Assembly (NCBI GenBank): GCA_965649765.1
Contig: OZ287757.1
Coordinates: 27,342,001 to 27,406,000, forward strand
DNA from: Bispira polyomma
Taxonomy: Eukaryota
Length of the DNA stretch: 64,000 bases
Direction of reading: 5' to 3'
Below, in pieces: positions 1 to 63,839 of the stretch; position 1 is the first letter of the stretch, and every line of letters starts with the position of its first letter. The notes under the pieces are model-generated. The model worked only from the letters and a program-made list of their open reading frames with translations. It did not search any database and was not told where the DNA came from. Made by a program: the position numbers and the translations under genes.

Positions 1-1084
1 AGAGAAAAGAGATTACCAAGGATTCAAATGGTATTTATAGCTAAAAGAAGGTTTATTTATTTGAATTTTCTAAATTCACATGAACCATTCATCCAGGCTG
101 TGTATTCACAAAGATTATTATTATTCTTAATTTTTTTTTGTCGGTCAATTTCAATGGCCACAAATACTGCTTGCAGAAAACTGATTGACAATGCAAATTC
201 CAAGACCTGCTAAGAATGTTTGAATAAACCACCCTTGGATGAGAACCGTAAACTGGGTCTATTGTTTCAATCACTGCCAACGGAACATATTGCCAACTAC
301 TGTCACTTAACTAAATATTTTTTCTGCTTCATGTTTATTAGTGGCTCTTTTGACGATGTAAGAACTTAGAACTGTATGCAATATAGTAATAATATATTAA
401 ACTAGATTTTACACCTTTCTAAATATGATTTTGACGCTAATTCTGTATGGTAACAACTCTGTACTTCTTTATTAGTTTGCCGTGAATTTTAAATATATTG
501 GGGCTTTTGAGACTGTTTTGTGTTATATTTGACATATAGAAGCACCATGATTACATCTTAGAAGTGGAGTCATATTTTTTAATATACACCACACGGGTAG
601 TTTTACTATTATACTTCACAACTGATGGACTGTATTTTTCCCAAAAATTTTTTTGGGCTATTCCGGGGCACCCGCTGTCAAAAGAAAAGAATATATAAAT
701 TGAGACTCATTATTAATTTATCATCATGAATATTTTTACAAGTCCAAGCTGACACATATTATGGTAGATATTTACCTCCGAAAAAATCTCTTTTTCTCTG
801 TAAGGTTTACACAGAGTAAGTAGTAACTAAGAAATATATTTGTAAATACTGTATTATTGTTTATAAAGTGTATTTTATTGGGTGTAAAAACATGTACGTG
901 TTAAACAACGTCCTGTAGCTCTAAGACACACACCACCGTCATACAATTCTAGATGTAAAAAATTAATATTGCATACAATTTCATCTCTTGTAGGATATTG
1001 CTTGCAAGCCTGCTGTACTAGGTTAGAATTTGGATATTTAACGTCCACTCTAGTACCTTTTAGTAGGTTATATTGGGACGGCTG

Positions 1085-1118
<34 letters not shown>

Positions 1119-4100
1119 TTTGTTATATAGCACTGTATATATGTCGCATTAATAGTGCAAAATGACATCTAATCCAAGTATATTACAAGTTCAGATCATG
1201 AGTACTACAAAGTACATTCTAGTCCCCGAGAAATTGATTTATCATATTGTAAACAACATACACAAGTATATCACGAGAGATAACACCCCCATACAAATCT
1301 TGAAAATTTGAGGACTTTTTGTTCTGCAATTCCTGGTAAGAAGCCACAACAGTCAGCTGAGGATTCCAATTTAATTGGTGTTTAACATGACCTTTTTACA
1401 TTTATGTGATATATGAAGACAGGCAGTTTACAGAAAACAAGCACAGATTGGCTGCCCAAGAAATCTGGGCTGGTATTCATAAAAAGTCTCAAACTCAAAC
1501 TCAATCTCAAACTTAAATATAATCCTAATATATAGGTTATAAAACCTATATTTGAGCTTCTACTCAAACTCAAATTAAATACCTATTCTTAAAGAAGCCT
1601 ATGCTCAAACTCAAACTTAAACTCACTTATAATCCCTAAAAATAGGGATTATATTTAAGTCTGCAAAGTAGGTGAACTTAAATATTTAAGTTTTGTCAAG
1701 ATGGCTTCCCTTATGACAGAAGATATTGTGTATGAGAGGGCATTTCGTAGGGAAAGGGTGTTTAGGGACAGATTGAATCCACTGGATACTTTAACTGACG
1801 AAGAACTTTACCGTAGTTACATTTCACAAGACAGGGTATATATTTTCTTGTTGATTTTTTAAATGAACACTTCTGCAGGGGGACTAATAGGAACCACTCA
1901 GTGTCAGACTCTCTAGTTTTACTAACAGGACTGAATTTTTATTCAAATGGCTGTTTCCAAAGGGTAACAGCAGATTGCAGGGATTTGAACGTGTCGCAGG
2001 CCATTGTTAGCCGCTGTGTTAATTCTGTCACCGATGGCTTAGTCCAACACAGACAATCATCAAATTTCCCACAGAACAGGGGAAAATACGACATGAACAG
2101 CAACAGTTTTTTAATATGAAGGGCATTCCTAGCATTGTTGGCCTAGTGGATGGTACCCATGTCAAGATACAGAGGCCAACACAGAATGGGGACCATTACG
2201 TGAACAGACATGGGTACCATTCTGTCAATGTACAAGTCGTTTGTGAGTCGTCGAAATTTAACATCACTAATTTAGTTGCTAAATGGCCCGGGTGTGTACA
2301 TGATTCCGTAATTCTGAGGGAATCAGAATTGTCTTGGTCATTTGTTGATTATCTTAACTTGATAGACTATTTACCGGTGTTTTAAACTTCATCAATTTCA
2401 CATAACTAGGTCATTTTAAGTATTCTTATAATACATATGGATGTACTGTTATATCCAGTAAATTTCCATGTGAATTCCATAGAAAAGTTATGTTGTGTAC
2501 TGAATTTGTTTTGTACAGTACATCAACATAAATTTATGAAGGAATATTTTGTTAGGCTGATTCTGTATGTTTTATAACAACAGACCACTTCATGAAACAA
2601 GGTATTTCATTGGGTAAAAGTTATCTCAGTCTCAAACTCAAACTCATTCTTATACTTATGTAGGAATGAGTTTGAGAATACCAATTTAAGCATATACTTA
2701 CGTAGGACAATATCTGAGTTTGAGATTATATTTAAGATTGAGTTTGAGTTTAGGATTTTTTATGAATACCAGCCCAGTTATTCACTGACAACAACCCACG
2801 ACTACAGAGGGGGAATTGAGTTGTATACATCACTTTCAACTGCTTCATATTATGATGACCAGTTTTCATTGTGGAAGAAACCATTGACACCAGTATACGG
2901 CAAGTACTTGACAAACTTTCCCACATGAAGGATCAAATAACATTAAGTCCACATTGGTGGTGTATAATACATATACATAATGACTTGAATGACCAATCCA
3001 AATGGCAATTCTCTTGTTATTGGAGCTTTTATCGAGTGGCTACCTAAGGAACCTTAGGGACATTGATAGAAGGTCGGCCACAAGCCTATTACTGCAGCCT
3101 TCATTGTAAACCACATACACACCAAAATGAAGCCTTAATCCTTAATAAATAACTAATTCAAACATTTAATGTCAAAATATTTATTGGCCCAGTCAGTAAC
3201 ATAATTGCTTATGAACACAAAGGGACCTAGGTTTGATCCCGGAAGACACATATGCAGATACATAATGGCTCAGATGACCAATCAAAATGTAAGTTCTCTG
3301 TCATTGGGTCTTTTATCCAGTGTCCGGTAAAGAACCTTAGGAATATTGACAGAAGGTTATTTTCAAGCCTCTGCCTTCAGTTACAGGAATGGCAGTGACT
3401 GGTGCTGATTGACTGTATTTGGACAGTCATGAAAATGTACATTAGCGCCATGAGTATGAATATGAATACAAATTAGGGTGTAATCTATGTTGACTAATAA
3501 GTGATTTTGACAAACTGAGCTTCCTCTAACAATTGATTTGATGAATAGGATATGGGCAATACCAAACGTTTTGTACCCAACTTTACAAAATGTATCCAGC
3601 ACCTTTCGTCAATTGAAAAGGAAGGTGATTGTCCATACATTGACAGTCTAGAGGGAGATAAAAAATACCCTTTAAAAACATTGTGGTTTGTGAGTTACAG
3701 AAGTCCTGGTTGTAATGGGTATGCCATTTGTTTCGCAAGGAATCTTTTAAAAAATTCTGCCAGGCTGATCAGCCAATACAAATCTTTGTACAATTGCTCC
3801 ATTTTTTCTATATGAATACAAAAAGTACTTGCGCCACAATAAATGGATTAAAAAATATCAGCAAAAGATTTATATGCCCAAAGATATCTTTGCTTTTATA
3901 TTATCACCAAAGCAATTTCAGTAATCAAACTTATTGATCACTATTGTGCAAATTATAGGTGACCCATGCAGGAATATAAGGAATGCAAAAGTCACAAGCA
4001 GAACACCAATAGGCAAGTATAATAATAGTTATCAACACAATATTTTAACACACATCTTAATATTTTATAAGAACTATGGGTCTGTGGGGCAGGTATTGCT

Positions 4101-7100
4101 TGCCTATCAATAGAGAGATAACACCCCTTATAAATATTGAAAGAATTTAGACCAATTACTATTCTGCAATTCTATAATACAGTTAAATGTTGATCGAAAA
4201 ATATCAGAGCAGGATTTTTATTTAGTTAGGATTTTTAGAATTACTTTTAAAACTTGTGTGTTATGATGATGGATAGTTTACAGGTCAAGCTGGTCAACAT
4301 ATCTTTACTCTAAACAACTGGCCTTCAACAAATCCACTACCAACTTTCCACATACAACCTGAGTCCGATATTTGAACCCACAACTACAGATTTGGGCCTT
4401 AGTTAGGTTGTACCTCGCTTTTAACAGTGATTGGCCAGATTTAATGGTGGAAGAAACTTGGTCGAAGCACTGTAAACCATCTATGTAGGGAAGTACCTGA
4501 CAAATTCAAACCTATAGTGGTCATGGACCAGTGATTGTTAAGCAAGTGCATCTAACCAATATGCCATTGAGTCCCCCACACCACTTAATAAGTTTGTAGT
4601 ATCATCACAGCTCAATTTAGAATTCACTTAAATTTTTGGTCTCTTTTGGTTTGATCTGTTTACTTATTCTGGATAAGTAGATTGTCAAAGAAAGTCCTGT
4701 TGTAACATTAAATGAATAAAATATTCGTCGTTATCCATGTAATTTTCAAGGTTCTATTCACTTAAGATTAAGTGGTTCTAATCCTGATTGGCAAATATTT
4801 GCAATTTTGCCTTAGTGGTACCAATTTTTTTTTGTTTCCAGATGTGTTTTTTAAATGGCGGAAATTCTTCAAAAAAATTGCAATTTAAATTGACATTTTT
4901 AAGTAATTGAGCACACATAATTACATAAAATGCTAAAAAATACAGCAGTAAACATCAATATGATAGAATTATACAGATTTTATGGAGACAAGTTACAACA
5001 CAGAAGCTCTTGTATCTGACACCCAGCTAAAGTAAGGGAAAACACAAATGTAAATATCGTTTAATCTGCTAGGTGATTAGGTGCCGCAGGTGTCGGGCTT
5101 TCACCCCAGAGTGTCACATTAAGCTAAACACCAAAGCTACTATTTTGAGGCATAAGGCAATATCAGGTTAATATACAAATTTACATAAATGTACAGATTC
5201 CAACCCGTGTTTCTATCACAATTGAACATTTCATAAAGAAACATCATAAGCCTCGGGCCCATGGGAGAAAGGTTATACTTGACATGATTATCCAATTTAT
5301 TTTGCTGTGAATGGTATTCACTTAACTATTTCTAGTCAGTTACTATGCATATTAACCAGGGCTAGTCTCGTTTACACCTATTATACATGCTAGTCATGGG
5401 TATATTTTGAAATTCTTACCAAGGTTTAAATTTCAAACTATTTTATAATTTGCCTTTATATATATTACTAATATGTACAGAATAAATTCTGCAAACAAAT
5501 CTTTTACTGTCTTCTCAAGGTCACAAACCTGTAGCCTAGCATAACTTTTATATATTTAACTTGTTACTGTAACACATCACTAATATTAAAGATAACTGTA
5601 TCAGTTTAGTGCACACACAGTACATACCACCGAATGTTAATTGCATAATTAATCAGGTATCATAGTAATATTCTTTTCTATTTTTCTTTGTATGTTTAAA
5701 TGTTTTCATTTTTAAAATGGCCTTATCTTTAAGTCTTTAAAAATAAAATGCACACTTCAAAACAAATGTAAAATAATATGCAACTTCATTAACCGTAACA
5801 GTAAAAATGAACCAAATCAATTGTTGTCATATTCTCTTATATAGCACAAGCCTCGTTTTACCAAAGTATGGACAGCAGCTCAACAGAAGACTCTGTTTTA
5901 CCATCAATGTCGAGAGGAAGCAGACATTCCGTGCAAATCAGAAGTATGTCATTTTCTGGTGAAGGTTGCAAAGGATTCATTTCCCATTTTTTTGATAAAA
6001 ATATAAGAATTAAAATTCACATTTACAAGTAGTGTAAAGCAAAATTAGCACACATAATTGCATAAATGCTGTAAAATACAGCAGTGTGCATAAATATGCA
6101 AGAATGTTACTGATTATTTAGCACAAAGTCCCCAAAGCCAGAGTTAAGATTTTGAGCTTAGAGACAGGTGTTATATTGATACTGCCAAAGTAAACATTTA
6201 AACAAATTAACAGTAATGTTCAGTTATGGTTAATTTGTGTTTGTCGGAGAACTGAAAAACTTATATATTTCACATTTTGTTATTATCATGTTCAAGTGAA
6301 AATAATTTGATGTGGATTATATAAAAACTAGTAATTCTACTTTTTAATGTCAAAATAGTCTATATTATTGTCTATTATTTTTACTATCTAACCTATACTT
6401 TTATCTAGAATTGTATGTAAATTTAATCTAAATAGTTTGATACTTCCTGTTTTGCATAGAACCTGACAAAACTACCTTTTCAATGCCAGAGAAGACAAAT
6501 GAAGAACTCATTGCAATGCAGGATATTGACATCACAGGCGGAGGTATTTATTCAGTTCCAAAGTTCAATGTAATGCTGTCTGTTCCTCCATTGGAAGAAA
6601 CAACTCAAATACAACTTGCTAGCGAGGCTTGGAAAAACAATTCTCAGAATCCAATGACTAATGTCTATATATTACGTCCACATGGAACAATTTTCTCTGA
6701 CTACATATTGGTTTGTATTCCACTTGGCACTGAGTTGATGGAATCAGGAAATATTGAATTAATCTATAGTTGCACAGATATTGATGAAGAACCAGAATGG
6801 ATGAATCTGCAGCCTAATAATCTTGATGCTACACACAGGGATGAGATCTTCTGGATTCTTAACAAAGATCAAGTTTTTGTATTTACCAAACATTTCTGTC
6901 ATGTGTTTTTAACAAACTGCAGTGGGCTACTCAAGCAACCTGCTCTGTACCTAACAGCGTCAGTTTTTTACCAGTACCTACATCACATATCTCAAATAAA
7001 ATTCTCTGTTGGATTTCACTGTGGTAAATGCTATCCAGAACTGCTAGAATCTTCTGTAAGTAGATGATGCATTTCACTAATGACTAACTGGGGTTATTAA

Positions 7101-10100
7101 ATCACTATTGCTTCAATATGTATAAATGATAATAACTATAGTATTGATAAGTATCAATAATAGTTTCACACTGATTTAATTCTGGCCGATTGTCTGGAAC
7201 TTGTATCACTTGATTTAGGTAAAAATTAAATGTGAATGATTCTTCTTTGCATTGACGCTTTTATTTAATTTTTAAAATTTTTATTGTATTGAAACATTTA
7301 AACTGTAGCCAAAAGTAGAAATTTGTGTACAATATAAAAGTTCAGAGCTCGCAAATCTGATACACGACGAACATTGAGAACTAATCATATTTACAAAAGT
7401 TAAAAAAATGGTTTATATTTTCAGTAATGCCTGTGCTTCAATTAAAATGAATAAATTCAGCTCAACCCATGTGTTCCAATGTATTTGAATTCTTAAAACT
7501 TCAGCAAAATCAATTGTATGGTTATTTTTTTACAGACCAGTAGAGGTGCTCTGATGGACTACTGTTGTAAATGTATCTATGGAAAGGAAACTGCAGTAGT
7601 GATAAATGTGGATATGACTAATAAAGGCTGGAACAGTTTATCTTCTGAAGCGGTAATTGTTATCAATACTATAATTATTATGGTTATATCACTTTACAGT
7701 CGATTAAAAAATCATTATGTCAGAGCAGTTAAATTATAATAAAAAATTCTATTTCAAGATTACAAGGTTTTCGTCACTATGTTCATGTTCAAAACATCTT
7801 AAACAATACATTGAAAACATTAAGACCGAAAAATTTTAGACCAGATTTGGGTACATTCACTATATACTAATAGACAATTATCAAATATGTACATGTAGTG
7901 GTTCGGAAGACCACTTTAAATGGTGATTCTCTGTCATTGCTTCCTATCCCCAGTGGCAGGCTAAATAAGTTAAGGGACGCTGATACACAGTCATCCTCAA
8001 GCCTCCTTATTCAGTTAGAGTTACAGGTACTGGTTGTAAATGTCAGTCAAAAAAGGTTAATTACCAAATTATTTTGACCATGTCATAAAATAAGCCCATT
8101 GCCATATGTATTACTTTCAATAAGTTTTAATCTTATAACCAAGTCAGTGGAATTTGTATGTATAGCTCAGGGGCCGAATTTACTAAAGATCCAACAGTTT
8201 GAAGGAGTGTAGTTTTCAATGTATAACTGCTTAGTTTTGATGATATCAAAATGACACGAAAAGTTGTATTAGCATGAAAGCTAGACTAGTGACTATAACT
8301 TTCTTTATATCATATTATTCTATAGACTGCTTCAAAGCCAATGATATTATTTAGAAAAAATATTTCCTTGGTTAACGCTGACACCATCACCATTAAACAG
8401 ATTTAAATTCCGGCATTTGTTACACCTGGAACCTATGTCTACCAAGAACAAGTAGGGTTCTGCTAATTCAGTTCAATAGTTCACTCATATTTCAACCCAT
8501 AGGGAATGAACACAACACTAGAATCACTTGTCATGAAATGTTTTGAAGATTATTATAATAACGACTATGCATTTGAGTTCGGCTGGGTCCACGGTTCACA
8601 GGCCATTTCAAGGCGTTTCTGATGTCATAGCCTATGAAATAGACCGATTGGTAGATTCAATATTCTGTTATATTGATGACTACATTGGAATATATCCAGT
8701 CGACGAGGACAATTTATCTATCGTTATACTTAAGGAATATATGGCTGTTCTCAGCCAGATATTATATTTCTCTTAAAGTGCAACATTTTAGGGGTGCAAA
8801 GAATGTTATAGCAGATTACCTTTCAAGAATCTACTCTGACCATTCCACTACTTTGGAACATCATAACATGCTTTATAATAGGTTTACCTAGAGACACATT
8901 ACACTGCATTACTTTAATATCAACCTCACTGTATAGTTGAAGGTGCATCCACTGTCACTCAACAGCTCATGAATTCAGCTTTGGAAAGACTTAACACTGC
9001 TCTGCGAGCTAAAACTACATCAGCATACATCAATCAGTTTAAGAAATTTATAACATTCAATTGCTTTGCTGGTATTCAGGTTACACAGAGATCTCATCTC
9101 ATAAGCATGTGACATTCTTTCTGACACTATTATTCTATTATTCTCTTTGTACAGTATCTTTGCATTTCCAATATTGCACCCTATTCTAGGGCCACATTTG
9201 ATTCCTCACGTCACTTTCTGAAAAAAACATTATATTCGGCCCAACAGGGGCACATGTCATTTCAAAATGGGCAAAAAATCTTTAAGACGGATCTCAATCT
9301 CACATAACTCCAATCTCTGCTTTACAGAATAAGATACTTTGCCTGTTCAGGACTATACAAAAACTTCTTGTCTCTAGGCCCCTTCATGAATCTCCACCAC
9401 AATTTGCACACTTTCATACTCCCAATCATACAGTTATAGATACTCATGTTCGATCTGCTTTCTCCTCGGTGTTAACTCATAGGGATTCCACATAAATCTT
9501 AGACTTCTCCTACCTTTAAACAATAATGTATCCCTACAAAAAATTATGTCACATGGACTGTGGAGATCCTCAACAGTCTGGACTTATCTCCAGAAAACAC
9601 CAAAAGCAGCTTCCAGTCAATTTTGCCTCCTACATCCATTCTCAACTTTAGTTTTGGGTTTTGGATGTTTTAAAATTCTATACATTTTAAATATTTAACT
9701 TTTTAATATTAAACCTGTATCATAGATTTGTAACATGTACAAAATAAAATCCTCAAAACTTAGTTATACTCTCATGTCATTTACCTCTTCACATACACAT
9801 GATCTTTACCTTCACCTCATACATTCACACTAGTGAACATGTAGGGTTCTGATAATTCAGTTCAATAGTTCACTCATATCTTAACCCTAGGGAATAAACA
9901 CAACACTATAATTCACTTACCATTTAATAACTAATCACATCATTTGCCCTCTGTTCTAGCACCATATACAATATGGGGTCAATTATATTGAAATCACACT
10001 CTGATAAAGCAACACAAAGGAAAATTGCCCACCTCTTCCGCATTATCCAATCTTATTAACGAATTGCTGAATAATTTATGAATTTGACATAAGGGATCAT

Positions 10101-12652
10101 GTCAATCAATCTGACTGGCCTGACTTTATTTTCCTCGCTTACAATAGGAGATTGTTAGTATAGCAGACTCCATTGTTTATAAATTATATTTGAGGTCGTT
10201 ATTGAATAACAGAAGTGGTCTGTGGTGTGTGTTTTAGTGACTTCAGCTATCTGTAACCTATTACCCGAAAAATTTCCTTCAGTTCCAGGTGATAGTATTA
10301 TCTTGTGCTCGAAAAGGTTAAGTATTAAGAGCCTCTTTAATAGCAGTGAATATCTCTTGGTATTGGCATGTGAGTAGTGAAACAATTCAAATAACAAAAA
10401 CTGTTTATTGGATACAACATCGTTTGCTACAATGAAGACCTCAAAAGTTATCTATTTGGCTCTTTTTAAGTAATCTCTAATTTGTGATATGTTCAGTCTT
10501 AGCAATGGCTTCTATAAATGATATGCACATTTGACCATATATATAAGTGGATCCATTGTTTAAGTCCGTTTCTTCTCATTAAGTGACCACAGCCATTTAA
10601 AATGTTTGAATGGATTAAAGTGTGAAGCTTTGGATGGGCAATCCTGAAGAAAATATATAAGTCTTGTGATGAGATAAGCAATGGTCTGGTTAGATATCAT
10701 GCATCTTTATGTCCTGTTGATTCATCATGCAAACGAGGTATAATCTTGAAAGTTTACAACTGTCATACTTTGTGTACTCCTACGTAGACAGTCCCTTATG
10801 TTTTACTTTTAATTGGTAGATAGTCATAGATAGATATCGGTACATCTCAGTTGTGGGTTCAAAAGAAGTCAAGGGTACTTGCTTTTCTCAGGACTATTTG
10901 TAGTAATTTGGTGGTGTATACCATATTTTATACTTTTTTCGTTTAACAGATATTTACTCAGAGCACATATGAAGATTATTTCCAACCTATATTTTCACAT
11001 AATCCGAACCTAAAGGCCAAAGTAAAGCGAACATGCTGATATGCTAACAAAAGCTGCCCAGATAACATGTCAGAATATCAGTGATACAATTTCTGAACTG
11101 ATCTCATTTCTGTTTTAAGTAGAATTGTATAATACTGTGTATCCAGATTTTGATGATGTTACAACTATATTTAGATGGAAAAAATAACCAAAGTTAGTCA
11201 ATACCTACTGTAATCAACGGGGGCTCTCCAGTCAGTAATGGCTGTATTTATGAGTTATGGTTTTCTTAATTGATAATTACAACTGCACATTTATACATTT
11301 ATACATGGCTCATTCAGCAACTTTACTTATGCTTGTATTGTAGAGGGTTGACGCTACTGACTTGCTGAATTTGTGCCAAATAAACCAGATTTACCCTCCT
11401 ACCATGTTCACATTCAGTTGGCTGGGCAGTGGCGATGTCACTAAAGGTGAATTATCTAATACTGTCATAACCTTCAGACAAGGGCACAGAAATTCCAGAA
11501 TAGAAGGTTCACTGCAGGTATGGTACATCCTCTTTTTATCCCAAAAATACAATTTTATTAACTATTTTAACTCTAAATGTAGACTTTTCCATTGTTTTAT
11601 GTCAAATTGCATCTTCTGTAATATGAACATTCTATTATGTGACGTACAAAGTTCCAAGATATTTGATAGTATCCATATATGTACTAGATTGCATTGTCTG
11701 TGTTTCACAGATGAACAACTGTGTTCAAAGAAAAAAAGCACAGATATATGCAAGACATGCCACAGAACATCCATACCCTGTTGAACATGTTGACCTACGA
11801 GCATCTGAAAGCACACAGGCGAGTATACATGTACCAACTGAATTTCATACAACACCGATTCAAGATATAACTTGTACACTAACACAACCTGAAATACCAA
11901 GCATCACCAAAACTTCAGTGAAGCAGCCAGGATTACATTCTGCTGCAGTTAGTAGTGAACCTTATCTCGATATAAGCATCAGTCAAGCAAGAGTATCTCC
12001 AACTGGTGCGGAAGAAAGTGAAGATGAAACAGAGTTAAAATGTGTAACAAACAGCATTCCAACTCATGCTACTGAACTATGTGAAGGTGAGACACATTTA
12101 AAAAGTATAGCAGAATCAAGGGTCAGTCCAACAAGAGGATCCCTGGACAGTGAAACATATTTAGAAAGTGCAACAGACAAACCTCCTACTAGTGCTGATG
12201 AAAATGCTAATGTAACTTCTTTGGAAAGTGTGATAGAAACCCCTCATGCAACACAGCAAGTGTTAGGCGGGGCCAGACCCAAAACTGCTACATGTTCTGA
12301 GGGGACTACTGTCTCTGTTGAAAAGCTGGATGTTGATGCTATTTTTAGTGTGTCACTCAAGGAGGAAGAGAAATATCTTTGTGAATTACTCAATAAAAAC
12401 ATAAGATGTTTAATAACTATTTTAGTTGATCAAGGTTTTGATGGTAGCCACTTGTCACAGAAAAATACTAATGGTATCATTTTCTTAAGGATTTGGAAGA
12501 TGCTGGTCGTGCAAAAACAAACAACCTGGCCTAAATTACATGCCTGTTTACTGCAAGCAGGCATGAAAAAAGCTGCACAAACATTAAAAAATGTCTACCA
12601 GAAAAATCTCAAGATAAAGTTATCAGAGGTGAACGAAAAGTATGCAAATTAA
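1..12652 (+). CDS. Gene A: UNC5CL/ZUD-like ZU5-UPA-death-domain protein, 5'-partial, spliced (exons 1-30, 994-1021, 5845-5943, 6460-7055, 7536-7652, 10950-11021, 11344-11517, 11711-12652; 685 aa in window)
   Basis: All internal exons are AG/GT bounded and join in one open frame (intron phases 0,1,1,0,0,0,0). ZU5 motifs ITGGGIYSVPKFNVMLSVPP, RPHGTIFSDYILVCIP and TKHFC; C-terminal death-fold-like segment ending FLRIWK..TTWPKLHACLLQAGMKKAAQTL. The small exons are less certain than the large ones. Confidence 0.8.
994..1021 (+). CDS. Gene A 28-nt micro-exon (DIACKPAVL)
   Basis: ctcttgtag acceptor, gttaga donor. Same length, phase and upstream intron as the gene C exon at 62945-62972. Confidence 0.6.
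1027..1082 (-). mobile_element. 3' fragment of tRNA-derived SINE
   Basis: aatttggatatttaacgtccactctagtacc...aggttatattggga matches the 3' end of the SINE copies at 42292-42487 and 50301-50562. Confidence 0.7.
1088..1116. repeat. (TA)n microsatellite
   Basis: Direct inspection. Confidence 0.95.
1465..2777 (+). mobile_element. Internally deleted PIF/Harbinger DNA transposon in a gene A intron
   Basis: TIRs ctgggctggtattcataaaaa / tttttatgaataccagcccag with subterminal aaactc/gagttt arrays; encloses a transposase fragment. Confidence 0.88.
1701..2330 (+). pseudogene. HARBI1-like Harbinger transposase, frameshifted and truncated
   Basis: MASL..RRERVFRDRLNPLD..DEEL N-terminus from 1701; GIPSIVGLVDGTHVKI..YVNRHGYHSVNVQVVC..AKWPGCVHDS..LRES (DDE_Tnp_4-type motifs) in ORF 2116-2385. 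Confidence 0.88.
3185..3380 (+). mobile_element. Old tRNA-derived SINE copy; paralogous copy at ~63270-63460
   Basis: A-box-like tggccccagtcagtaa and B-box-like ggtttgatccc; collinear with 63270-63460. Confidence 0.5.
5845..5943 (+). CDS. Gene A exon (AQASFYQSMDSSSTEDSVLPSMSRGSRHSVQIR)
   Basis: 99-nt phase 1-1 exon, ttatatag/gtatgt, open in the frame required by the ZU5 exon. Confidence 0.7.
6460..7055 (+). CDS. Gene A ZU5-domain exon
   Basis: Overlaps ORF 6483-7067. ZU5 signature GG..V.L.VP, PHG..F...I.V.IP and HFC; tttgcatag acceptor, gtaagt donor. Confidence 0.88.
7536..7652 (+). CDS. Gene A exon (putative UPA region)
   Basis: ttttttacag/gtaatt, 117 nt, phase 0-0, within ORF 7518-7739. 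Confidence 0.75.
8452..9920 (+). mobile_element. Deleted Ngaro-type YR retrotransposon in a gene A intron
   Basis: Direct repeats gtagggttctg.taattcagttcaatagttcactcatat at 8452-8530 and 9841-9920; RT YIDDY, RNase H QHFRGAKNVIADYLSR, YR remnants (SNIAP, HGLWRSSTVWTYL). Confidence 0.85.
10950..11021 (+). CDS. Gene A exon (IFTQSTYEDYFQPIFSHNPNLKAK)
   Basis: Pyrimidine tract plus aacag acceptor, gtaaag donor, 72 nt, phase 0-0, open. Confidence 0.65.
11344..11517 (+). CDS. Gene A exon (putative UPA C-terminal part)
   Basis: ttgtag/gtatgg, 174 nt, phase 0-0, in frame with ORF 11362-11784. An alternative in-frame acceptor exists at 11388. Confidence 0.7.
11711..12652 (+). CDS. Gene A terminal exon: S/T/E-rich linker plus C-terminal death domain
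   Basis: tgtttcacag acceptor, ORF 11639-12652. The last ~95 aa have a death-domain pattern (W...TW.KL..CL...G....A..L). Confidence 0.85.
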   Translation: MNNCVQRKKAQIYARHATEHPYPVEHVDLRASESTQASIHVPTEFHTTPIQDITCTLTQPEIPSITKTSVKQPGLHSAAVSSEPYLDISISQARVSPTGAEESEDETELKCVTNSIPTHATELCEGETHLKSIAESRVSPTRGSLDSETYLESATDKPPTSADENANVTSLESVIETPHATQQVLGGARPKTATCSEGTTVSVEKLDVDAIFSVSLKEEEKYLCELLNKNIRCLITILVDQGFDGSHLSQKNTNGIIFLRIWKMLVVQKQTTWPKLHACLLQAGMKKAAQTLKNVYQKNLKIKLSEVNEKYAN

Positions 12653-46982: not shown

Positions 46983-47225
46983 GACAAAGCTAGGCACTAC
47001 ATATACTAACATCAAATGAGATAACCACTGGCCACAAAGCTATACACTACAGACACCCACAACAAATCAGATAGACAACACTGACCACAAAGCTAGACAC
47101 CACAGACATCTACAACAAATCAGATAGACACTAACCACAAAGCCAGATATTACAGACACCTACAGAAAATGAGATAGACATTAACCACAAAGCTATGCAC
47201 TGCAGATACCTACAGCAAATCAGCC
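46983..47225. repeat. Minisatellite, ~50-bp unit (cacaaagctagacactacagacacctacaacaaatcagatagacactaac); further units at 49125-49192
   Basis: 4-5 degenerate tandem units. Confidence 0.85.
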
Positions 47226-51769: not shown

Positions 51770-52040
51770 CGAAGAAGGGGAAGATGCGTATGGTCATGTT
51801 CAGTGATGCAGAGGAAGATCCAAAATACAATAACACCCAGGCTAAAGACCTATTGTGACTGGAGTTCTGCTTGGGCAAGGGAATGTACATGGAAGAAGTG
51901 AGGAAGTGGTTTCAATCACAGAGGACTATCTATAACAAGCTGAGCATCAGGAAGTCTGGCCAGGTAACACCTGAGTTGACAGAGAGGCAGCACTGGGTCA
52001 AGAACACCTTTGACTTTTTAAAACCTCACATTATATGACA
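51770..52040 (+). pseudogene. Remnant of a Harbinger accessory (MADF/Myb-like) ORF
   Basis: KWFQSQRTIYNKLSIRKSGQ..ELTERQHWVKNTFDFLKPHI resembles Harbinger DNA-binding ORFs; stops present. Confidence 0.6.
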
Positions 52041-53974
52041 TGTCTCGAGAACATCCGGCTTTAGACCGGTCGCATCCACCCAAAACATCCAAGAACAATG
52101 TCGGAGCTGTTGTTGAAAAAACCATAAAAACCCCTCATGACAAGAAGCATACTGCTTGCACAAATAAATTTTAATAACACACATACACACAAATAAACAA
52201 TACCCCCCCCCACACACACACACATAAATAAGAAATAAATTGTTAACTTTTAAACTAATAAACCCCGCAAGTATAAATTTGCCCAACATACACCACAGAA
52301 GGAAAATACTTGGCCCCTAAACAAATATTTTTTGTAAAAATGCAATACTACAAACCATCCCAGGTAGAAATGTGACAAGTTCACACCCCCCCCCCCCTTT
52401 ATAAATATGTGGAAAACCCCTAAGTAAAACTATGTTGAGTCAAGTCCCTTCATGTGGAAACCCCCCTAAGTAGAACGCTGTTGAGCCAAGTCCACCAGTC
52501 ACCAGTAAGTCAACTGCCAGCCTTCCCACATACACCCCAGAGCAAAGATTTAAACCCACAACAGCAGTTGTAGAGGGGAGTATATTACCACGACAACACA
52601 GAAGTCCCCAGCTTAGTTCATGTAATTACACTCGTTCTGCATATAGAACTTTGTAACACTGACTTGTCTGCCTATCCTAAATCTTGATCAAAACTAAATG
52701 AGGAATGGTGCACTTTATTTACCATTAATGTAAAGTCCCCCAAAATTCCCCAAGAAGAATATAGAAGAAAGGAAATTGCGTCAATATCCTAATTACTGTA
52801 AAACTGGAAAATTATATTACCACCCCATTTTTTGGTATTTTTACTAATTAGCTAGATCAGTACAAATTTATTCTCAGTTCAAATTTTAGTGTAATGTAAA
52901 ATAATATTCATATGGGTTTTGAGAAATTGTAATTTAATGATATTTTCTTTTTACTAAACTTCCAATAAAATACAAAAATACCATAATATATCAAATTAAG
53001 CACTGGAGGTTGGCTGGTTTATTCTCTATAAACATAACCTCACTTATTTACTTCCTTGTGATGTACATTATATATCTCTATGACTTTTCATATAAGAGGG
53101 CTCTGTTTACGGTTCGTGCAATTTGTCTACAAGAGGAGAAATTTGAACACTGAATGTGGAGAAGTGTTTTATACCCCATATGAAAACCTCTGTACAAATT
53201 TGCCTTGTTAAAACTTAAGTATCTTATTTATGAGTCGAAAAAACATATTAATCAGTTGGACTTTTAAATCTACATGGAATACATATCTCACGATAGACTA
53301 TCTTGGTGAGACTATAGTAATAAAGATTATTCTTGTGTTAGTGTGGTATAAATAGCAAGCACTTATGTGTTTATAAGGATTTATAGCAAATAGATTTATA
53401 TGTTATTGGTGTGAATTAAGGGAAGTGACAAGCTACTATGATAGTGGGATATACTATAAATATATGATAGAGGATAAAGCCAGGCATTATATCAGGTAAT
53501 ACTTTCAAATACCTTGCTTAATCTATATACATATATAGCTAGTAATTTATACTGTTAAATGTGTATGATACTGTTTATTCTGGATTGTGTTCCCATAGAT
53601 ATTGCCGTTTCTTGCCATGCTGTAACGCCTTCACATTTAATATTTTAACAAATTATGTTGGCTATAATTTAAATCAGAAGACTCTTCCACATTTTACCTT
53701 GATTATTTTTACTTAAAATGTATTATTTGAAATACATTTCTACGCTGTTCATTACTACCCTGAGTTAGCAAATCGTTGTAAATGTGAAATGGCAACAAAA
53801 ACGTAAGAAATAAAACCCTAAATTAAGGAATCTGCTAGTCAAAAATATATGGAATTGAAGATAAATGGTTCTATTTTGTATACCAACCTTAGGTAAGTAC
53901 AGATCATGTAAACTTTACTTAGACATAGTTTTAGTTTCTGAATATTTAACATCCATGTTCTTTGTGAGAACCTG

Positions 53975-54245
53975 TTGGCGCATGCGCACACCATCTTTTC
54001 CTGTGGGATTCCCTGGGGGTTTTCCGATTGGAATTTTTTGACAGAATAAGACCTGTTAATATTTATTAAATACAAATGATCCCCAATGATATATTTCTAA
54101 TTATTGTAGCCAACTTTGGTAAGAATTAGCAATAATTTAATCAACGCAAGTAAAGGAAGCAACACTACACATGTCCTTGACATTATATGATGACCGCGTG
54201 ATGGATTACAGAAACCTAAAATGGCGGACAAAATACCGGAAATAG
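53975..54245 (+). promoter_or_regulatory. Candidate promoter of gene C: NRF1-like, two kappaB-like, YY1-like and ETS-like motifs
   Basis: GCGCATGCGC 53978-53987, GGGATTCCC 54005-54013, GGGGTTTTCC 54016-54025, AAAATGGCGG ~54218, ACCGGAAA ~54235, locally CpG-rich, ~2 kb upstream of the ATG exon. Confidence 0.45.
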
Positions 54246-56144
54246 ACAAATTGGCTAATATATATATATACCTTGTGACGTTTTCTAAACAAAAATTGTG
54301 AACGGTTAATAACCTTTATTAAAGTAAAAATTTCATGTATTTAAAACAAATGAAGTGTATGCCTAAATGTGCTGTTTCACATTTACAACGATTTGCTATT
54401 GTAAACAACTCTGTCGCCAACAGCGGCAAATCAGAAAAAAAATGGCCGGTTCGGCGACAGAGAACTCAGTCTCGGTTCAAGGTATCTGTCACATATCGCA
54501 TATCACGGCAGTTAATTGGTGGAGGAAATCTGGTCAGGGAAGTTGATCAAGATTTCTGTTCAGCAAACAACCTGCTTTCAGCTAGTCCACTGTCATGTTT
54601 CCCACTTACATGACCGTAACGGTAAATTTCGAAGCCCACGACTGCAGAGGTGGGAGTCAAATTTGTTACCACTACATAACTAAGGCTCCAAACTGCACAA
54701 CATGACATTGAAGATAATTATAAACGATTTGGTGTTTCAGTTTGTGTCTCTGTTGGGTCACCAAAGTGATCAGAATTCCACATAAAAGGCTGATTCATTG
54801 AAACAGTCCATGACAAAACTAGGTGTATACATATAAGACGGGAAAAGCATATTATACACTTGAAAGGTATGTTGTGTGTTTCAAGAAATTACACGTGTAT
54901 TAGGCAAATTAATATCCTTTGATAAACTGCACTATGCTCAATATTTTGTAAGGCCACTATTGCTGGCATTAGGCAGTAGCCTAAGGTAGTTCATTCAAAT
55001 TTAACCAATCACAATTGGATATCGCATAATTTCATAAAAATATTTCTTTATTTTCTTGATAAAATTTGTATGGTTCTGAGTTTGTTAAAGATGGCTTTGC
55101 TAGAGTGAGCTTTGGTGATGAATTGACCCAGTTTAGCTATTCTTGTGTTCAGTCTAAATATAATAATGGTTGGTATTGCAGGTAAATGTAAGTCTTTGGT
55201 TTAGGATGTTTCTGCAAGTACTACAACTGTAAACAGTGATTATTATCTAGGCATGGCGTTAAAATAGACCTTTCTATCACTGATAGTATGAGGTGCAATA
55301 TATAGGGAAGGCTATAGACCAAATTGCTACAAAAACGTGGTTATCTTAGAATCCATTTTCAACAACCTTGATGAATTTTATTGTTACACCAGTCACTGGA
55401 TAAAAAACAATGGAATAAAGCTGCATGTGGAAACCAGGGCTTTTTATGTTCTTCTAAAGACAGAGCTACTTAAAACATTAAGGGAAATGTGGTCCTGTGG
55501 GTAAGGCGGTCATTAAAAGCAAAAAAAAAAGACATCGATTTTGTCCTGTGCTCCCAGGTAGCAAAAACAAGTTATTGATAGAAGAGGTTAGAAATAAGGG
55601 GTTTCTTTTTTTAAAAGTTTAACCTTGAAGGTCATATATTAAGTAAGAAAGTGATGATCTATAAGTTAAAAACATAAACAGGTTAAAGTTAAAATGCTTA
55701 AAGTACAGGTTTAGGTAGTGTGAATGGAAGTAAAGGTAAAAGAGTGGAATTTACTAAGCTTGTAGTAGCCACAGGAATACCCTCTAACTACAAATGGAGA
55801 AACATTTGATTGGCCAGTTAGTGATCAGTCGCTCTGTAAGAAACAAGTAGGTTTTACAACATAAAATAAGGTAGGATACCACAAGGACCGGAGTTTCTTA
55901 CTGCCTGTACGATGGTAGCATTTGTAGTGGCCTGGATGACTGCTCAAGTTGAAATCCTTTGCTATCCTCAGTGGCTGGCTAAAGAATTGATGATATATTG
56001 ATAAACATACAGATACTGGTACTAGATGCATGCATGTTGGCATATATGCACACACACCAAACAAATTTGTTAATATGTATCAAAAAACATGAAAATATAA
56101 TTTGCTTTTTTATTTAAATCAATCCAGGTTTTTTTGTGTCAAAA

Positions 56145-59100
56145 ATGGATTTGTCCACACGATACAATGACATGAATGACACGTCCTTGACAACCAATTC
56201 TACAATAGCGGGTACTTAGCCATATTCATTTTAAATTGTTTATAGTTTAATAATGTGTACGATGTATTTAACTTTAGGTTCATTCCGAACTACCAAAAAG
56301 CCATTTTTTCAATAACCATGCAAAAAAATTAATGTGCCTGTAACTATTTTTCCACCTTGTCTCATAATTATAAATGGATAGGTGTAACCTATATTTCCTA
56401 CATCAGCACTAAGCTATCTCCAATGTGTTTATACCTTATACTAAGCAATATCCACAATTATAACAATTGTGTTGTTTATTATTATTATTAGTTTTAGCTG
56501 ATTCATCAGTCAGCTCATTCCCAGTTATAATTGTTGCGACAGTATGTGGACTTCTACTACTCGTGTTTGCTATACTATGTGTCACTACACATTATTGGAG
56601 AGCCAGAGAAGACAGGGGAGTGGATATGGAGCTAATAGAAAATGTATGGAGCTTATAGATTTACATGTTAATTAAGAAGGCCTTCTTTTTTTAATTACTA
56701 AACTCATACAAACCATTCATCCGGCTGTGTATGCACAATGATTAACATTCTAAATTTTTTATCTCAACCAATTTCTTTGGCTCCAAGGGATACGATTGGC
56801 TATGAAAATTCTAGAAATGCAAGCTACCCTTGTGAATAAACTACCCTTGGATGAGAACAATAACCATTGTCTATTGTTTCAATAATTGCCATCCATATCT
56901 GTTGTTAAATAAACAACCAAGTATTTTTAATATATTGACAACCACTGTCACTTTAGGGCTGATGGGCCCGTCCCACTTTTCTAACCTTGTTGCATTTTTG
57001 GTGTGATGTAGTTGTTATTCTGTGATCGCAGCTGGTCACCTGCCAATAATGTAACCTCTCTCCCAAATATGGTAAGATAGTGCTCATAAGCAATCTCAAT
57101 TTGACCATATTTGGACCATTGTATGATCAATTGCGAATCAGAGCAATCCAACTACATTCTTTGCAAATGCTGTGAGGTAACTTACATGCTGGTTGTTCGC
57201 AATCAATTACGACCATTTGCAACTGTATTACGACCAATTACAATGACTGTGCATTCCCTAATGGAACCAGTATGTGCACTGTACAACAATTGCGGTCTCA
57301 GTTGATTATTTGGGAAGGTACCAAAACCTCTTATCTGGATCTCCAGTTAGTGTGATTATCATCACGATCCTAGCATGCGTACAGGTAAAAAAAATGATCA
57401 AATCTAGGTTACTTTTAAAGGACTTAAAACTCTGACCATTGAGTTATTGTTTGTTGGTCTATTGATGGTAACACAATTAACTGTTAGCTTAATATCTGAA
57501 TGCTGCTGACAGGCTGGAATTTCTGACGCGTATGTGGGACGAGTGCTTTGGTTCTACGCTGCCTTTATATGATCAGTATGAGCATCTGATGGCCTTGGAG
57601 GACATAATAGCTTTCAATGAATTTGTTAGGGTCCACCCAGATATATTTCAGGAGCTGGGGGATCATTTGGTGCACAGGATTGAGAGGGCAAACACTTTCA
57701 TTTACAGGTTTATTGAACTAGCCTGCAGACTGGCCATCACCTTTAAACATCTGGTAATTAATATAAATCCATTATGTTTAGCTTCTGCATGGCTGCCGAC
57801 ACCATCTCTAACATAGTAGATCAGTGGAAGGTTGTTAGATTGGCCGTCAGATAGGCTAGATAGTTTGCTTCTCGCTGGAATTTCCAAACATTGAGGCTAG
57901 TAATGAAAGCATGTAGCCATCAGGTGTCGTAATAACAGGAGGTCACTACTATAATTAAAAAGGTTTCATTATACTCGTGGCACTGGTGGATGTGGACTAT
58001 ACGTTTATATTGGTGGATTCCCAGTTTATTAATGCCTGCCAACTGAAAGAGGCCATTAAAGATTAAAGGCACTATTAGCTTCGCCCCTGATGAGTTCCTA
58101 TTCAGGGATAACAAGCCCATGCCTTACTTCATAGTTATACTCTTTATAGTTTGACTGCGGAAATAATGTATTAAGCCAGTTCAAGATAAACACTCGCCGT
58201 AGGTTATCAAGGACCAGGATAATGGTCGAAAATGTATTTTGAGATTTTGGTCTACAGATTTGGCTGTCTCTTGACCACAAATAAGACCCAGACAGCTTGC
58301 CTGCTGCACACTGCGTCACTTAATAAAGACCATATACCCAGGGAGCCAAGCAGGTCCACTGGATCTGAATAATGCCAATCATTGTCTCATCCCTGGGCAT
58401 GGGGTCAGGGACTAGAATTACCAAACGTGGGCCAACAGGACAGTACCAAAATGGATTCTACAACTCCCCTCAGGATCAGTGCTATGACAGGACCAGATGA
58501 TCAGATGAGACATATTTATCACTGGTCCTTTCCAGGGGCAACATATGTGCCAGGGCCGTGCCTAGTGCCGTGGAGGCCCTTAAGAAAGGGGTCTACAGGT
58601 GTTGCATGCTAGTTATACTCATCAACGTGTGGTACTGTTGTGGTGGCTGTAGTTGTAGTACCGGGTTTGTGTTGTTGTGCCTGGCTGCTACTGTGGCTGT
58701 GGTTTAGGCTGCAGTGTTTTGTATGACAGCTACTGCGTGGGCTTTATTACCACCTGTTGAGAAGGAGGCCCATGACACCAGGCTGCTACTGGTGCTCGTG
58801 CTGATACACCACTTCACTCTCCTGCCCAAACTGGTTGTAGGTGGTAGTCATTGTGCTCTCAAAGCGGTTCTAAATGTTGGTATGTATATCCTTGTGAGTA
58901 CCAGCAGTCAGCTACAACCCCTATAAACTCTGCTGAATGTGTGGTAAGGAACTGGGTTGGCTGTTGTTGCTATTTTATCATCTGCAGCAGGTCTCCCTCT
59001 CTGGCACCTTTCTGGCGAGGGTGAGGACTTGGGTGCAGGAGTCTGGGTCCAGATTCCGCTGAGAGGGCTACATCGACTATCAACCTCCATAGCCTCAATG

Positions 59101-62100: not shown

Positions 62101-62972
62101 GTACCAAGAAGCTACCACTACAAAGAAGCCGCTACAATCAAAGCCCAAAATTTAAAGACCGTGAGTTTTAAATTTAAAGACTGGAGTTGACGGAGAAATG
62201 GGGAATAATCCTGAAGAATTGGCTACCAACTAGGGTGATTTTTGGATTTGCCTTGCTGTGCACTCCCAAAACACCACTGTTGGACCTGTGTATTACACTT
62301 CACATCTTTTGACTGTATTTTTGCGTCCAACTTCATAGATATTTACCTCAGAAAAAATATTTTTATCTTTTTAAGGTTTACACAGAGTAAGTAATATAAC
62401 TAACAAATATATTTGTAAATAAGTGTAATAAAAACATTTATTACGCATTGCACTACGTATCACACTCGATGATATATCATCAAACAGTGTCCCTCAAAAT
62501 GTATGTAAAAACTGGAAAAAATAGATATCTTAAAAAATATTCTGGTGAATATAAATTCTTACACCTTTCTAATTATTATGGTGACAACTGTTTTGCTTCA
62601 AACTTGCATTGTTACGTCTCAATCGACAGAAGGTTTACTATTTTAGGGTTTTTGGGGATATTTGTTCTTATAATTTGTTCAATTGTAAGAATGTTAATGA
62701 TAAAATATAGTGTGTAATAAAAGTAAACTTCTGTTGTGTATTTTAAAATTATATTACTCAAGAAGACAACATACTTACAAAATTCCCTGTCTTCTTTTGT
62801 TATATAATTTAATCATACACATCACTTGTGTAGTTTTACTATTGTACCACGTCCTGTAGCTCTAACATATTGAACACACAAACCTCACCATGACACAATT
62901 CCATATGTAAAAATTCATATTTCATACAATTTTATCTCTTGTAGAAAATTGATGAGGAGGCTTTGGCAGCAG
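56145..62972 (+). CDS. Gene C: 5' part of an UNC5CL-like paralog (exons 56145-56211, 56498-56643, 62945-62972; probably continues beyond the window)
   Basis: MDLSTRYNDMNDTSLTTNSTIAADSSVSSFPVIIVATVCGLLLLVFAILCVTTHYWRAREDRGVDMELIEN|KIDEEALAA. Introns are collinear with gene A introns (56690-56950 with 50-310; 62340-63120 with 770-1250; 63230-63750 with 3150-3690). Confidence 0.7.
57490..58330 (+). pseudogene. Decayed PIF/Harbinger transposase in a gene C intron
   Basis: F..FVRVHPDIFQEL..RIER.NT..RLAIT; YYN*KGFIILVALVDVDYTFILVD; RLSRTRIMVENVF*. Element ends not resolved (~56960-60250). Confidence 0.75.
60528..62106. repeat. Three-copy tandem repeat (601, 480 and 498 bp units)
   Basis: Units start actcaagatatcccgaggaag at 60528, 61129 and 61609; near-identical apart from indels. 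Confidence 0.95.
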
Positions 62973-63839
62973 GTATGTATTTGTTATACAGGTATATTAT
63001 ATATAATTGTCAATATATATCCATTAGAATGTAATGAACAAAATCTAATCAAAGCATAATTTGGTTTCGATCATGTACATTCCAGTCACATTTTAGGAGA
63101 AATTGTTGCATCATATTGCTAATTTTTACTCTTTGGTGGTTGATTGTTTGTCAACATAGTATAAACATATATTTCGTTAAACATTAATTATTAAATATTG
63201 AATGTACCTAATACAAATAGGTCAGTTGGAGTCATTAACCAATTTATTTGTTTAATGTCATAAAATGAATTGGCCTAGTGGGTAACATACTTGCTTTTAA
63301 ACACAGAGGACCTAGGTTCTTTCCCGGCAGACTCATGGGCAGATATAAAATGGTTCGAAAGATAACTCAAAATGGTGGTTCTCTGTTATTAAGGCTTTTA
63401 TCCAGTGGACTATAGAAATTTATGGACATTAACAGAAGGTCATCCTCAAGCCTCTCCTCTAGCTGTATTTAGACAGTCATGGAAACGTATATTAGTGCCA
63501 TTAGTATGAATAAAAACACAAATGAGGGTATAATCTATGTTTACTAATAATTATTTTTTGACAAATTGAGCTGCCTTTGACAACTGATTCAAGGGATAGG
63601 CTCTATTTTGTATTAGGATGGGATAGACAATGTATACCAAAATTTGGATACCAAACTTTATAAAATGTATCCTGCCATTTCATTCAATCGAAAAGGAAGA
63701 TGCTTGTCCATAGCCTTGGGGATATAAAAATATACCACGTAAACATTGTTTGTGAAAAGACTTTTCTTGTTACTTAATCAAAAGCATTCAGCTGAGGATT
63801 GAGATTTGATTGGAGTTGGTCAAAATGGCACCAGAAAGT

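What the first reader, a model, noticed from the sequence alone, without database searches (positions are those of the whole stretch)
1..63750. Tandem cluster of ectodomain-less TM-ZU5-UPA-death-domain (UNC5CL-like) genes
Seen: gene A encodes ZU5...DD but its start lies outside the window. Gene C has the same intron sequences and a 28-nt micro-exon in the same position, and supplies a ~30-aa N-terminus with no signal peptide, N-glycosylation sequons (NDT, NST) and one TM helix. Gene B shares that N-terminal exon. Established: vertebrate UNC5CL (ZUD) is a membrane-anchored ZU5-UPA-DD protein lacking the Ig/TSP ectodomain of netrin receptors and is linked to NF-kB signalling. Inference: a lineage-specific expanded family of membrane-tethered death-domain signalling proteins, plausibly innate-immune sensors or adaptors. 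The ORF track hides it because it is split into small exons.
Basis: partly seen in the sequence, partly recalled or inferred. Interest (0 to 1): 0.8.

Follow-up and report, generated by a model that had tools for sequence, protein, structure and literature searches.

The report
Membrane-anchored self-cleaving death-fold signalling genes
An invertebrate genome carries two intact, recently duplicated genes for a membrane-anchored protein that probably cuts itself and releases a "death-fold" signalling piece, built like the vertebrate protein UNC5CL but apparently a separate family with a cysteine at the cut site.

Summary
Observation confirmed and completed. Both models are open with GT-AG at every junction (739 and 756 aa); no ectodomain was found. 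ZU5 is well supported; UPA only weakly; the C-terminal domain is a death fold of unresolved subtype. The cluster is small: two complete genes, a short gene B without ZU5 or death fold, a relic, and a distant ZU5 gene E upstream. The genome holds at least 15 related loci, mostly dispersed. Features not in the finding: His-Phe-Cys at the position of the HF|S self-cleavage site (44 of 78 aligned relatives; the scan noted it before on gene E), a 207-274 aa acidic linker before the death fold, and fast-diverging membrane-proximal exons. It works like UNC5CL/PIDD/CARD8 but is not shown to be a UNC5CL orthologue. No RNA run exists, so the TM-to-ZU5 splice is unproven. Joined models were not searched. 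New variant of a known kind; interest 0.42.

The parts
1..30 (+). Gene A exon 3, in-window part (whole exon -42..30, 73 nt; same length and phase as gene B exon 3). Gene A's exon 1 (-1204..-1132, sequon NVT) and TM exon (-843..-726, hydropathy 3.16) lie just outside the window
994..1021 (+). Gene A 28-nt micro-exon, phase 0 to 1
5845..5943 (+). Gene A 99-nt Ser-rich exon, phase-neutral; no paralogue support, may be optional
6460..7055 (+). Gene A ZU5 exon plus start of the UPA-like region
6891..6899 (+). His-Phe-Cys (H275-F276-C277): predicted self-cleavage site F|C
7536..7652 (+). Gene A UPA-like exon 1 (117 nt, same length in gene C and in a second species)
11344..11517 (+). Gene A UPA-like exon 2 (174 nt)
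11711..12652 (+). Gene A last exon: 207-aa acidic low-complexity linker, then a death-fold domain (about 12350-12610), stop
36658..36730 (+). Gene B exon 1 (sequon NVT)
37029..37176 (+). Gene B TM exon (hydropathy 2.72)
37940..38012 (+). Gene B exon 3, 73 nt, two Tyr
39179..39235 (+). Gene B exon 4, 57 nt, acidic, two Tyr; a candidate last exon from 39622 stops after 19 codons (about 136 aa in all)
39927..55897 (.). 16-kb block mostly 92-99% identical to -46292..-29392; begins right after gene B's modelled exons and carries gene C's upstream region
56145..56211 (+). Gene C exon 1 (sequons NDT, NST)
56498..56643 (+). Gene C TM exon (hydropathy 3.14)
62945..62972 (+). Gene C 28-nt micro-exon, phase 0 to 1. 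The gene continues outside the window: ZU5 exon 67882-68483 (78% identical to A), UPA-like exons 68978-69094 and 74810-74983, last exon 75487-76623 (274-aa repeat linker, death fold 57% identical to A)

Best explanation
Genes A and C are intact recent tandem duplicates encoding single-pass membrane proteins without a signal peptide (type III: a glycosylated stub of about 30 aa outside, the rest in the cytoplasm). SHOWN from sequence: exon order, open phases, TM helix, ZU5 fold, death fold, purifying selection, invariant His-Phe-Cys. INFERRED: (1) the TM exons splice to the ZU5 exon (about 0.85); (2) the ZU5 domain cleaves itself at F276|C277 (A) and F228|C229 (C) by an N-to-S acyl shift, the thiol version of the HF|S reaction of PIDD1 and UNC5CL (about 0.7); (3) the C-terminal UPA-linker-death-fold piece stays bound to the membrane-anchored piece through the last ZU5 strand until that piece is cut, degraded or clustered, then oligomerises and recruits a death-fold partner (IRAK-type kinase, adaptor or caspase), giving NF-kB-type or cell-death signalling (about 0.55). 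Gene B and relic D are truncated by-products of birth-and-death duplication. It works like UNC5CL/PIDD1/CARD8; it is an invertebrate ZU5 family, not shown to be UNC5CL itself.
For: Open GT-AG models in two copies. Same ZU5-UPA1-UPA2-last exon order in a C1 paralogue and in a second species, with the same intron positions, a 117-nt UPA1 exon and a shared neighbour gene on a contig of the same length. The ZU5 exon opens in phase 1 in A and C, and by inspection in C1, so it is an internal exon needing upstream coding exons. dN/dS A vs C: ZU5 0.32, UPA 0.44 and 0.19, death fold 0.48. ZU5: ESM features 0.96; C1 paralogue passes Pfam ZU5 cut-off; family profile hits ankyrin E=3e-17 and UNC5B E=6e-7; AF2 model pLDDT 86 matches ankyrin and UNC5b ZU5. 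Phe invariant and His above 90% in 56 aligned sequences; next residue Cys, Ser or Thr in nearly all aligned rows that have letters there; the triad lies between strands 128-135 and 138-142 of the model, the place described for the CARD8 site, and Cys is a recognised nucleophile for this reaction (PMC3210808; PMC9162469). Death fold: six-helix model whose top 45 structural matches are almost all CARD/DED/PYD/DD or designed relatives; C1 paralogue Pfam Death E=0.02. The same ZU5 family is fused to TIR, RHD-dimer, DED, LRR and Death domains in other animals.
Against: No RNA evidence at all. No TM exon was found within 10 kb upstream of the second species' orthologue on either haplotype, so the TM link is unconfirmed outside this genome. 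UPA rests on position and weak exon-wise profile matches (P=0.0025 and 0.067). Death-fold model is modest (pLDDT 65, best Z 7.1, below the tool's 'common arrangement' caution of 8). No cleavage, partner or pathway was tested.
Confidence: 0.55

Rival explanations
1. Protease tripwire sensor, as in CARD8/NLRP1 but tethered to a membrane: the fast-evolving cytoplasmic linker between TM and ZU5 is bait for pathogen proteases or ligases; its cleavage triggers degradation of the N-terminal piece and frees UPA-death fold. A sharper version of the best explanation.
For: Membrane-proximal exons diverge faster than their flanking introns (micro-exon 14/28 vs intron 44/49; exon 3 38/65 vs 42/49) while ZU5-UPA-death fold are purified; the same layout (disordered N-terminus, self-cleaving ZU5-UPA, death fold) underlies CARD8 sensing (PMC10249858).
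Against: Few codons, pairwise only, alignments of the small exons are poor; dN/dS near or above 1 (1.1-1.9) also fits relaxed selection or exon replacement; intron flanks next to acceptors are constrained by splicing.
Confidence: 0.2
2. The TM exons form separate short membrane-adaptor genes (like gene B), and the ZU5-UPA-death-fold part is a cytosolic protein with another 5' end.
For: Gene B shows the TM part can exist alone; TM and ZU5 exons are 7-11 kb apart; no TM found within 10 kb of the second-species orthologue; gene E has no such TM exon.
Against: Both A and C have TM, micro-exon and ZU5 in the same order with compatible phases despite different TM donors; the ZU5 exon is a phase-1 internal exon and the Met after the acceptor is not at the same position in A and C.
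Confidence: 0.12
3. Non-immune role: a ligand-independent UNC5-type dependence or scaffolding protein (development, apoptosis in tissue turnover, cytoskeleton link as in ankyrin), with an uncleaved ZU5.
For: Closest solved structures are ankyrin and UNC5b; canonical UNC5 does not self-cleave (PMC10084454).
Against: The catalytic-type triad is the most conserved feature of the family; recent duplication, truncation and at least 15 dispersed loci are more typical of immune genes (own knowledge); a separate locus at C6:32.0 Mb has Pfam ZU5, UPA and Death in order and is the likely true UNC5.
Confidence: 0.1
4. A receptor with a real ectodomain coded by exons further upstream (TNFR-type, as in amphioxus relatives), the apparent ATG being internal.
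For: An acceptor precedes exon 1 in A and C; amphioxus P0073 and P0055 have, by inspection, a signal peptide and Cys-rich repeats before TM-ZU5-UPA.
Against: The stretch between acceptor and ATG is 22 nt in A and 17 nt in C (different frames), the acceptor is lost in B, and the conserved 2-kb upstream block has indels and stops in all frames.
Confidence: 0.03

Closest known systems
Vertebrate UNC5CL (ZUD)
   Same: TM anchor without Ig/TSP ectodomain, then ZU5-UPA-death fold; self-cleavage site at the ZU5 end (PMC10084454). The ZU5 model matches the UNC5CL cluster at TM 0.59, no better than UNC5 or ankyrin.
   Different: Cys instead of Ser at the cut; 207-274 aa acidic linker between UPA and death fold (UNC5CL is 518 aa and compact); 739-756 aa; death-fold subtype unresolved; multi-copy; no vertebrate among the named relatives.
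UNC5 netrin receptors
   Same: TM-ZU5-UPA-death fold order; profile hit to UNC5B over positions 7-182, E=6e-7.
   Different: No signal peptide, Ig or TSP domains; keeps the self-cleavage triad that UNC5 lacks; the genome has a separate likely UNC5 locus on C6.
PIDD1, CARD8, NLRP1 (ZU5-UPA/FIIND self-cleaving sensors)
   Same: His-Phe-nucleophile as in PIDD1; variable N-terminal linker and C-terminal death fold as in CARD8.
   Different: Membrane-anchored; one ZU5; no LRR or NACHT; no Pfam FIIND hit; HF|C rather than HF|S or SF|S.
Uncharacterised invertebrate ZU5-UPA-Death proteins (amphioxus XP_035659818, XP_066287333; crinoid XP_033122635, XP_071948739 'UNC5C-like'; sponge expansions noted in PMC3482391)
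   Same: Same extended ZU5 family; several carry TM helices; an unnamed relative P0047 has N-terminal TM, TIR and this ZU5.
   Different: They form a separate clade, often use Ser or Thr, and carry other N-termini (Cys-rich ectodomain, RHD-dimer, DED).

Membership tests
UNC5CL (ZUD) | N-terminal TM anchor, no signal peptide, no Ig/TSP ectodomain | tested here: met
   Exon 1 and TM exon in A, B, C; hydropathy 2.7-3.2; no conserved upstream frame. Splice to ZU5 is modelled, not read.
UNC5CL (ZUD) | ZU5 domain | tested here: met
UNC5CL (ZUD) | HF|S self-cleavage motif | tested here: not met
   His-Phe present but the nucleophile is Cys in all five aligned paralogues; chemically equivalent in principle, literally different
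UNC5CL (ZUD) | UPA domain | tested here: inconclusive
   No Pfam UPA hit at this locus; about 150 conserved residues after the cut match a UPA profile weakly and in the right order; joined domain not searched
UNC5CL (ZUD) | Death domain in the strict sense | tested here: inconclusive
   Death-fold superfamily supported; ESM ranks DED first, structure ranks CARD first, C1 paralogue Pfam Death E=0.02, profile to amphioxus/crinoid DD P=0.002
UNC5CL (ZUD) | Compact ZU5-UPA-DD supramodule (DD directly after UPA) | tested here: not met
   207 aa (A), 274 aa (C), 258 aa (second species), 127 aa (C1) low-complexity linker
UNC5CL (ZUD) | Orthology (one clade with vertebrate UNC5CL) | not tested
   No vertebrate UNC5CL sequence was obtained from the tools for the tree; of 30 hits looked up, the informatively named ones were amphioxus, crinoid and centipede
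UNC5CL (ZUD) | IRAK/NF-kB activation and observed cleavage | not testable with these tools
   needs expression
UNC5 netrin receptor | Signal peptide, two Ig and two TSP1 domains | tested here: not met
CARD8/NLRP1 FIIND sensors | Pfam FIIND with SF|S site and C-terminal CARD, cytosolic | tested here: not met
   No FIIND hit; HF|C; TM anchor
PIDD1 | LRRs plus two ZU5 domains | tested here: not met
   One ZU5 exon per gene, no LRR frame in the models
ZU5/GAIN/Nup98 autoproteolytic superfamily | ZU5 fold with His-Phe-(Ser/Thr/Cys) before the last strand | tested here: met
   activity itself untested

The most novel reading that the evidence does not exclude
An independently assembled invertebrate family of membrane-tethered tripwire sensors: a thiol-type (HF|C) self-cleaving ZU5-UPA module holds a death fold on a long leash at a membrane, and a rapidly evolving juxtamembrane linker detects pathogen enzymes, with truncated gene B as a decoy or adaptor. 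This would extend CARD8/NLRP1-style effector-triggered immunity to a membrane-bound form outside vertebrates.
Probability: 0.18. Interest if true: 0.8.

Novelty: new variant of a known kind. Interest (0 to 1): 0.42.

Why it matters
The ectodomain-less TM-ZU5-UPA-death-fold design is known from one poorly understood vertebrate gene. An invertebrate family with the same design, probably assembled separately, suggests it is a recurring solution for membrane-proximal signalling. The Cys nucleophile is the majority state in this family (44 of 78 aligned rows), and the papers I read did not describe a natural HF|C ZU5 (limited search; the key 2014 survey was not held), so it gives a simple biochemical test of thiol-type ZU5 self-cleavage. 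These genes escape Pfam and ORF-based annotation, so immune repertoires of such animals are probably undercounted. The limits: parts and order are known, function is inferred, expression is unproven.

Tried and rejected
Pfam on gene A and C exons: no ZU5, UPA or Death; only paralogues score. Word search with the ZU5 exon: nothing (length limit applies). PDB sequence search with single exons or the 3-sequence death-fold profile: nothing. Foldseek on the death-fold model: no E<=0.001. RNA runs: none; three DNA-type contig sets only. Whether the gene B / 16-kb block junction is real could not be settled: no listed contig bridges 39893-39973; depth is higher inside the block but is no copy number. 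TM exon upstream of the second-species orthologue: not found in 10 kb; its exon-3-like hit (E=0.03) has no acceptor and is treated as chance. Upstream ectodomain: rejected. Host phylum: not identified; a neighbour gene had only unnamed relatives. Heinz 2012 and Liao 2014 were not held; statements on them come via PMC10084454. A CARD call for gene E's C-terminus is by eye only; Pfam and profile tests were blank. Junction phases were checked in scripts, and exon 1 with the TM exon was read together once locally to place sequons.
Full report
Setting. The window is G000:C10:27342001-27406000 of a 1.035-Gb assembly in 75 contigs, 35% GC, no N; matches fall on contigs C1-C14. It is an invertebrate animal by inference (relatives in amphioxus and crinoids, DIRS-type elements); the phylum was not identified. 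It is not human. I fetched 80 kb on each side and continue the window numbering into the flanks.

Observation. Gene A has nine modelled exons, from an ATG at -1204 to a stop at 12652. All junctions are GT-AG, phases chain without a stop, 739 aa. Gene C has seven exons, 56145-76623, likewise open, 756 aa. The 28-nt micro-exons (994-1021, 62945-62972) match in length, phase and upstream intron. Exon 1 carries NVT (A, B) or NDT and NST (C), has no hydrophobic core, and is followed by a 19-residue helix of hydropathy 3.16, 2.72 and 3.14 with basic residues on its C-terminal side: a type III topology (inference from the positive-inside rule). The sequence between the upstream acceptor and the ATG is 22 nt in A and 17 nt in C, and the conserved 2-kb upstream block has indels and stops in every frame, so no shared ectodomain is coded there. 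Gene A's exon 3 is backed by gene B's exon of the same length and phase; its 99-nt exon 5 has no paralogue and can be skipped in frame.

What the cluster contains. Only A and C are complete. Gene B has exon 1, TM and two small Tyr-containing exons (117 aa), then a candidate last exon that stops after 19 codons; no ZU5 or death fold lies between it and gene C. Directly after it starts a 16-kb block mostly 92-99% identical to -46292..-29392. An exon-1 relic (D) without its first ATG or TM exon lies at -69151. A further ZU5 gene (E, -56052 to -50929) is only 18-20% identical, falls in another clade (100/100) and lacks the A-type TM exon. A and C are sisters (100/93), then comes the orthologue from a second species, then a paralogue on C1. 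A profile finds 15 loci on 9 contigs, a lower bound, three of them here. The picture is a small recent tandem duplication with losses, inside an older dispersed family.

Domains. Pfam misses A and C. ZU5 is still secure: ESM features 0.96 to ZU5 clusters, the C1 paralogue passes the Pfam cut-off, a 56-sequence profile hits ankyrins (E=3e-17), ZO-1 and UNC5B (E=6e-7), and the AF2 model (pLDDT 86) matches ankyrin and UNC5b ZU5. The roughly 150 residues after ZU5 are conserved in C, C1 and the second species, begin with beta strands in the model, and match a UPA profile weakly but in order: UPA is probable, not proven. The last 110 residues form six core helices (pLDDT 65); nearly all of the top 45 structural matches are CARD, DED, PYD or DD, best Z 7.1 to a chain of the Apaf-1/caspase-9 CARD complex; ESM ranks DED first at 0.89; the C1 copy gives Pfam Death E=0.02. 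It is a death fold; the subtype is open. Between UPA and death fold lies a low-complexity linker of 207 aa (A), 274 aa (C, with repeats), 258 aa (second species) and 127 aa (C1), unlike the compact UNC5/UNC5CL module.

The genes are under selection. dN/dS between A and C is 0.32 (ZU5), 0.44 and 0.19 (UPA-like) and 0.48 (death fold); against the second species 0.34 and 0.25 for ZU5 and death fold. That species (ENA ERZ22147071, two near-identical copies, probably haplotypes) keeps exon order and intron positions and a neighbouring glycosyltransferase gene on a contig of the same length. In contrast the TM and small linker exons give ratios near or above 1 and are less alike than their flanking introns; the samples are small and relaxed selection is not excluded.

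Self-cleavage site. All five genomic ZU5 exons first aligned share His-Phe-Cys. I ran the large protein search because Pfam and the word search had left the protein open; it gave 74 relatives. In their alignment the triad reads HFC in 44 of 78 rows, HFS in 8, HFT in 6; Phe is invariant in the 56-sequence set. In the model the triad sits on the turn before the last ZU5 strand, where CARD8, NLRP1 and PIDD1 are cut; Ser, Thr or Cys can serve as nucleophile (PMC3210808; PMC9162469). UNC5CL keeps this activity and canonical UNC5 does not (PMC10084454). Predicted cuts: F276|C277 in A, F228|C229 in C. I saw the triad before consulting earlier notes (note); the scan had also noted it on gene E.

Mechanism. 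Most likely the protein is inserted with a short glycosylated stub outside, folds, and cuts itself. The UPA-linker-death-fold piece stays docked on the membrane-anchored ZU5 piece until that piece is cut, degraded or clustered, then oligomerises and recruits a death-fold partner. Gene structure and folds are shown; TM-to-ZU5 splicing, cleavage, trigger and pathway are inferred (overall 0.55). Relatives join the same ZU5 to TIR, RHD-dimer, DED, LRR and Cys-rich ectodomains, which points to immune or death signalling. The tripwire version (PMC10249858) fits the fast linker but is speculative.

Comparison and novelty. It works like UNC5CL, PIDD1 and CARD8. It should not be filed as UNC5CL: the HF|S motif and the compact module are not met literally, DD and UPA are inconclusive, orthology was not tested, and the named relatives are invertebrate. 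It is not a netrin receptor; a separate C6 locus with Pfam ZU5, UPA and Death in order is the likely UNC5. Lineage-specific ZU5 expansions were already noted in sponges (PMC3482391). Verdict: new variant of a known kind.

Limits. No RNA run was found; the laid runs are contigs that cover introns and show gene B's region unchanged. No TM exon was found within 10 kb upstream in the second species.

Noticed in passing
window 20335-25884 (-): DIRS/Ngaro-type retroelement between genes A and B: ORF1, RT/RNase H and tyrosine recombinase ORFs, with split direct repeats 20335-20551/25667-25884 and 19656-19819/20549-20712 at 98%. Observed only.
   Followed up: partly
window 8446-9918: Decayed DIRS-type relic (by eye) with terminal repeats (8446-8529, 9835-9918) inside gene A's intron; further relics in the flanks.
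   Followed up: no
L010:3948-9071 (window -56052..-50929): Gene E: ZU5 with His-Phe-Cys, two UPA-position exons and a helical last exon that looks CARD-like by eye; orthologue in the second species (L026, 50% in ZU5). Pfam and profile tests for CARD were blank.
   Followed up: partly
window 11777-11794 and L023: The hexapeptide PVEHVD near the start of the last exon is identical in gene A and the distant C1 paralogue inside an otherwise unconserved linker; it fits the TRAF6 consensus PxExx(aromatic/acidic) (own knowledge); altered in gene C.
   Followed up: partly
window 37940-39235: Gene B's two small cytoplasmic exons hold four Tyr in an acidic context and end in phase 0, compatible with gene C's micro-exon 24 kb downstream; B could be a short adaptor, a pseudogene or an alternative 5' end.
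   Followed up: partly
P0073, P0055 (amphioxus); P0047 (unnamed): Relatives with signal peptide, Cys-rich TNFR-like repeats (by eye), TM and ZU5-UPA(-Death); and one with N-terminal TM, TIR and ZU5. A search for ZU5 + TNFR + amphioxus listed three papers, none on such receptors by title.
   Followed up: partly
G000 C7:4343037 and 4390551; C10:32364707 and 32551526; C4:95.8-96.3 Mb; C12:7.96-8.14 Mb: Other duplicated ZU5 or ZU5+Death loci and tandem arrays of death-domain exons.
   Followed up: no
window 54000-54040: NF-kB-like motifs (GGGATTCCC, GGGGGTTTTCC) 2 kb upstream of gene C, but inside a repeat that recurs elsewhere (53783-54408), so probably transposon sequence.
   Followed up: no
window 60528-62106: 480-bp tandem repeat (2.4 copies, 93%) in gene C's intron.
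   Followed up: no
window 1465-2777: Harbinger-like nuclease relic (by eye) with inverted ends in gene A's intron; LINE relics at 15012-15521 and 28567-30180.
   Followed up: no
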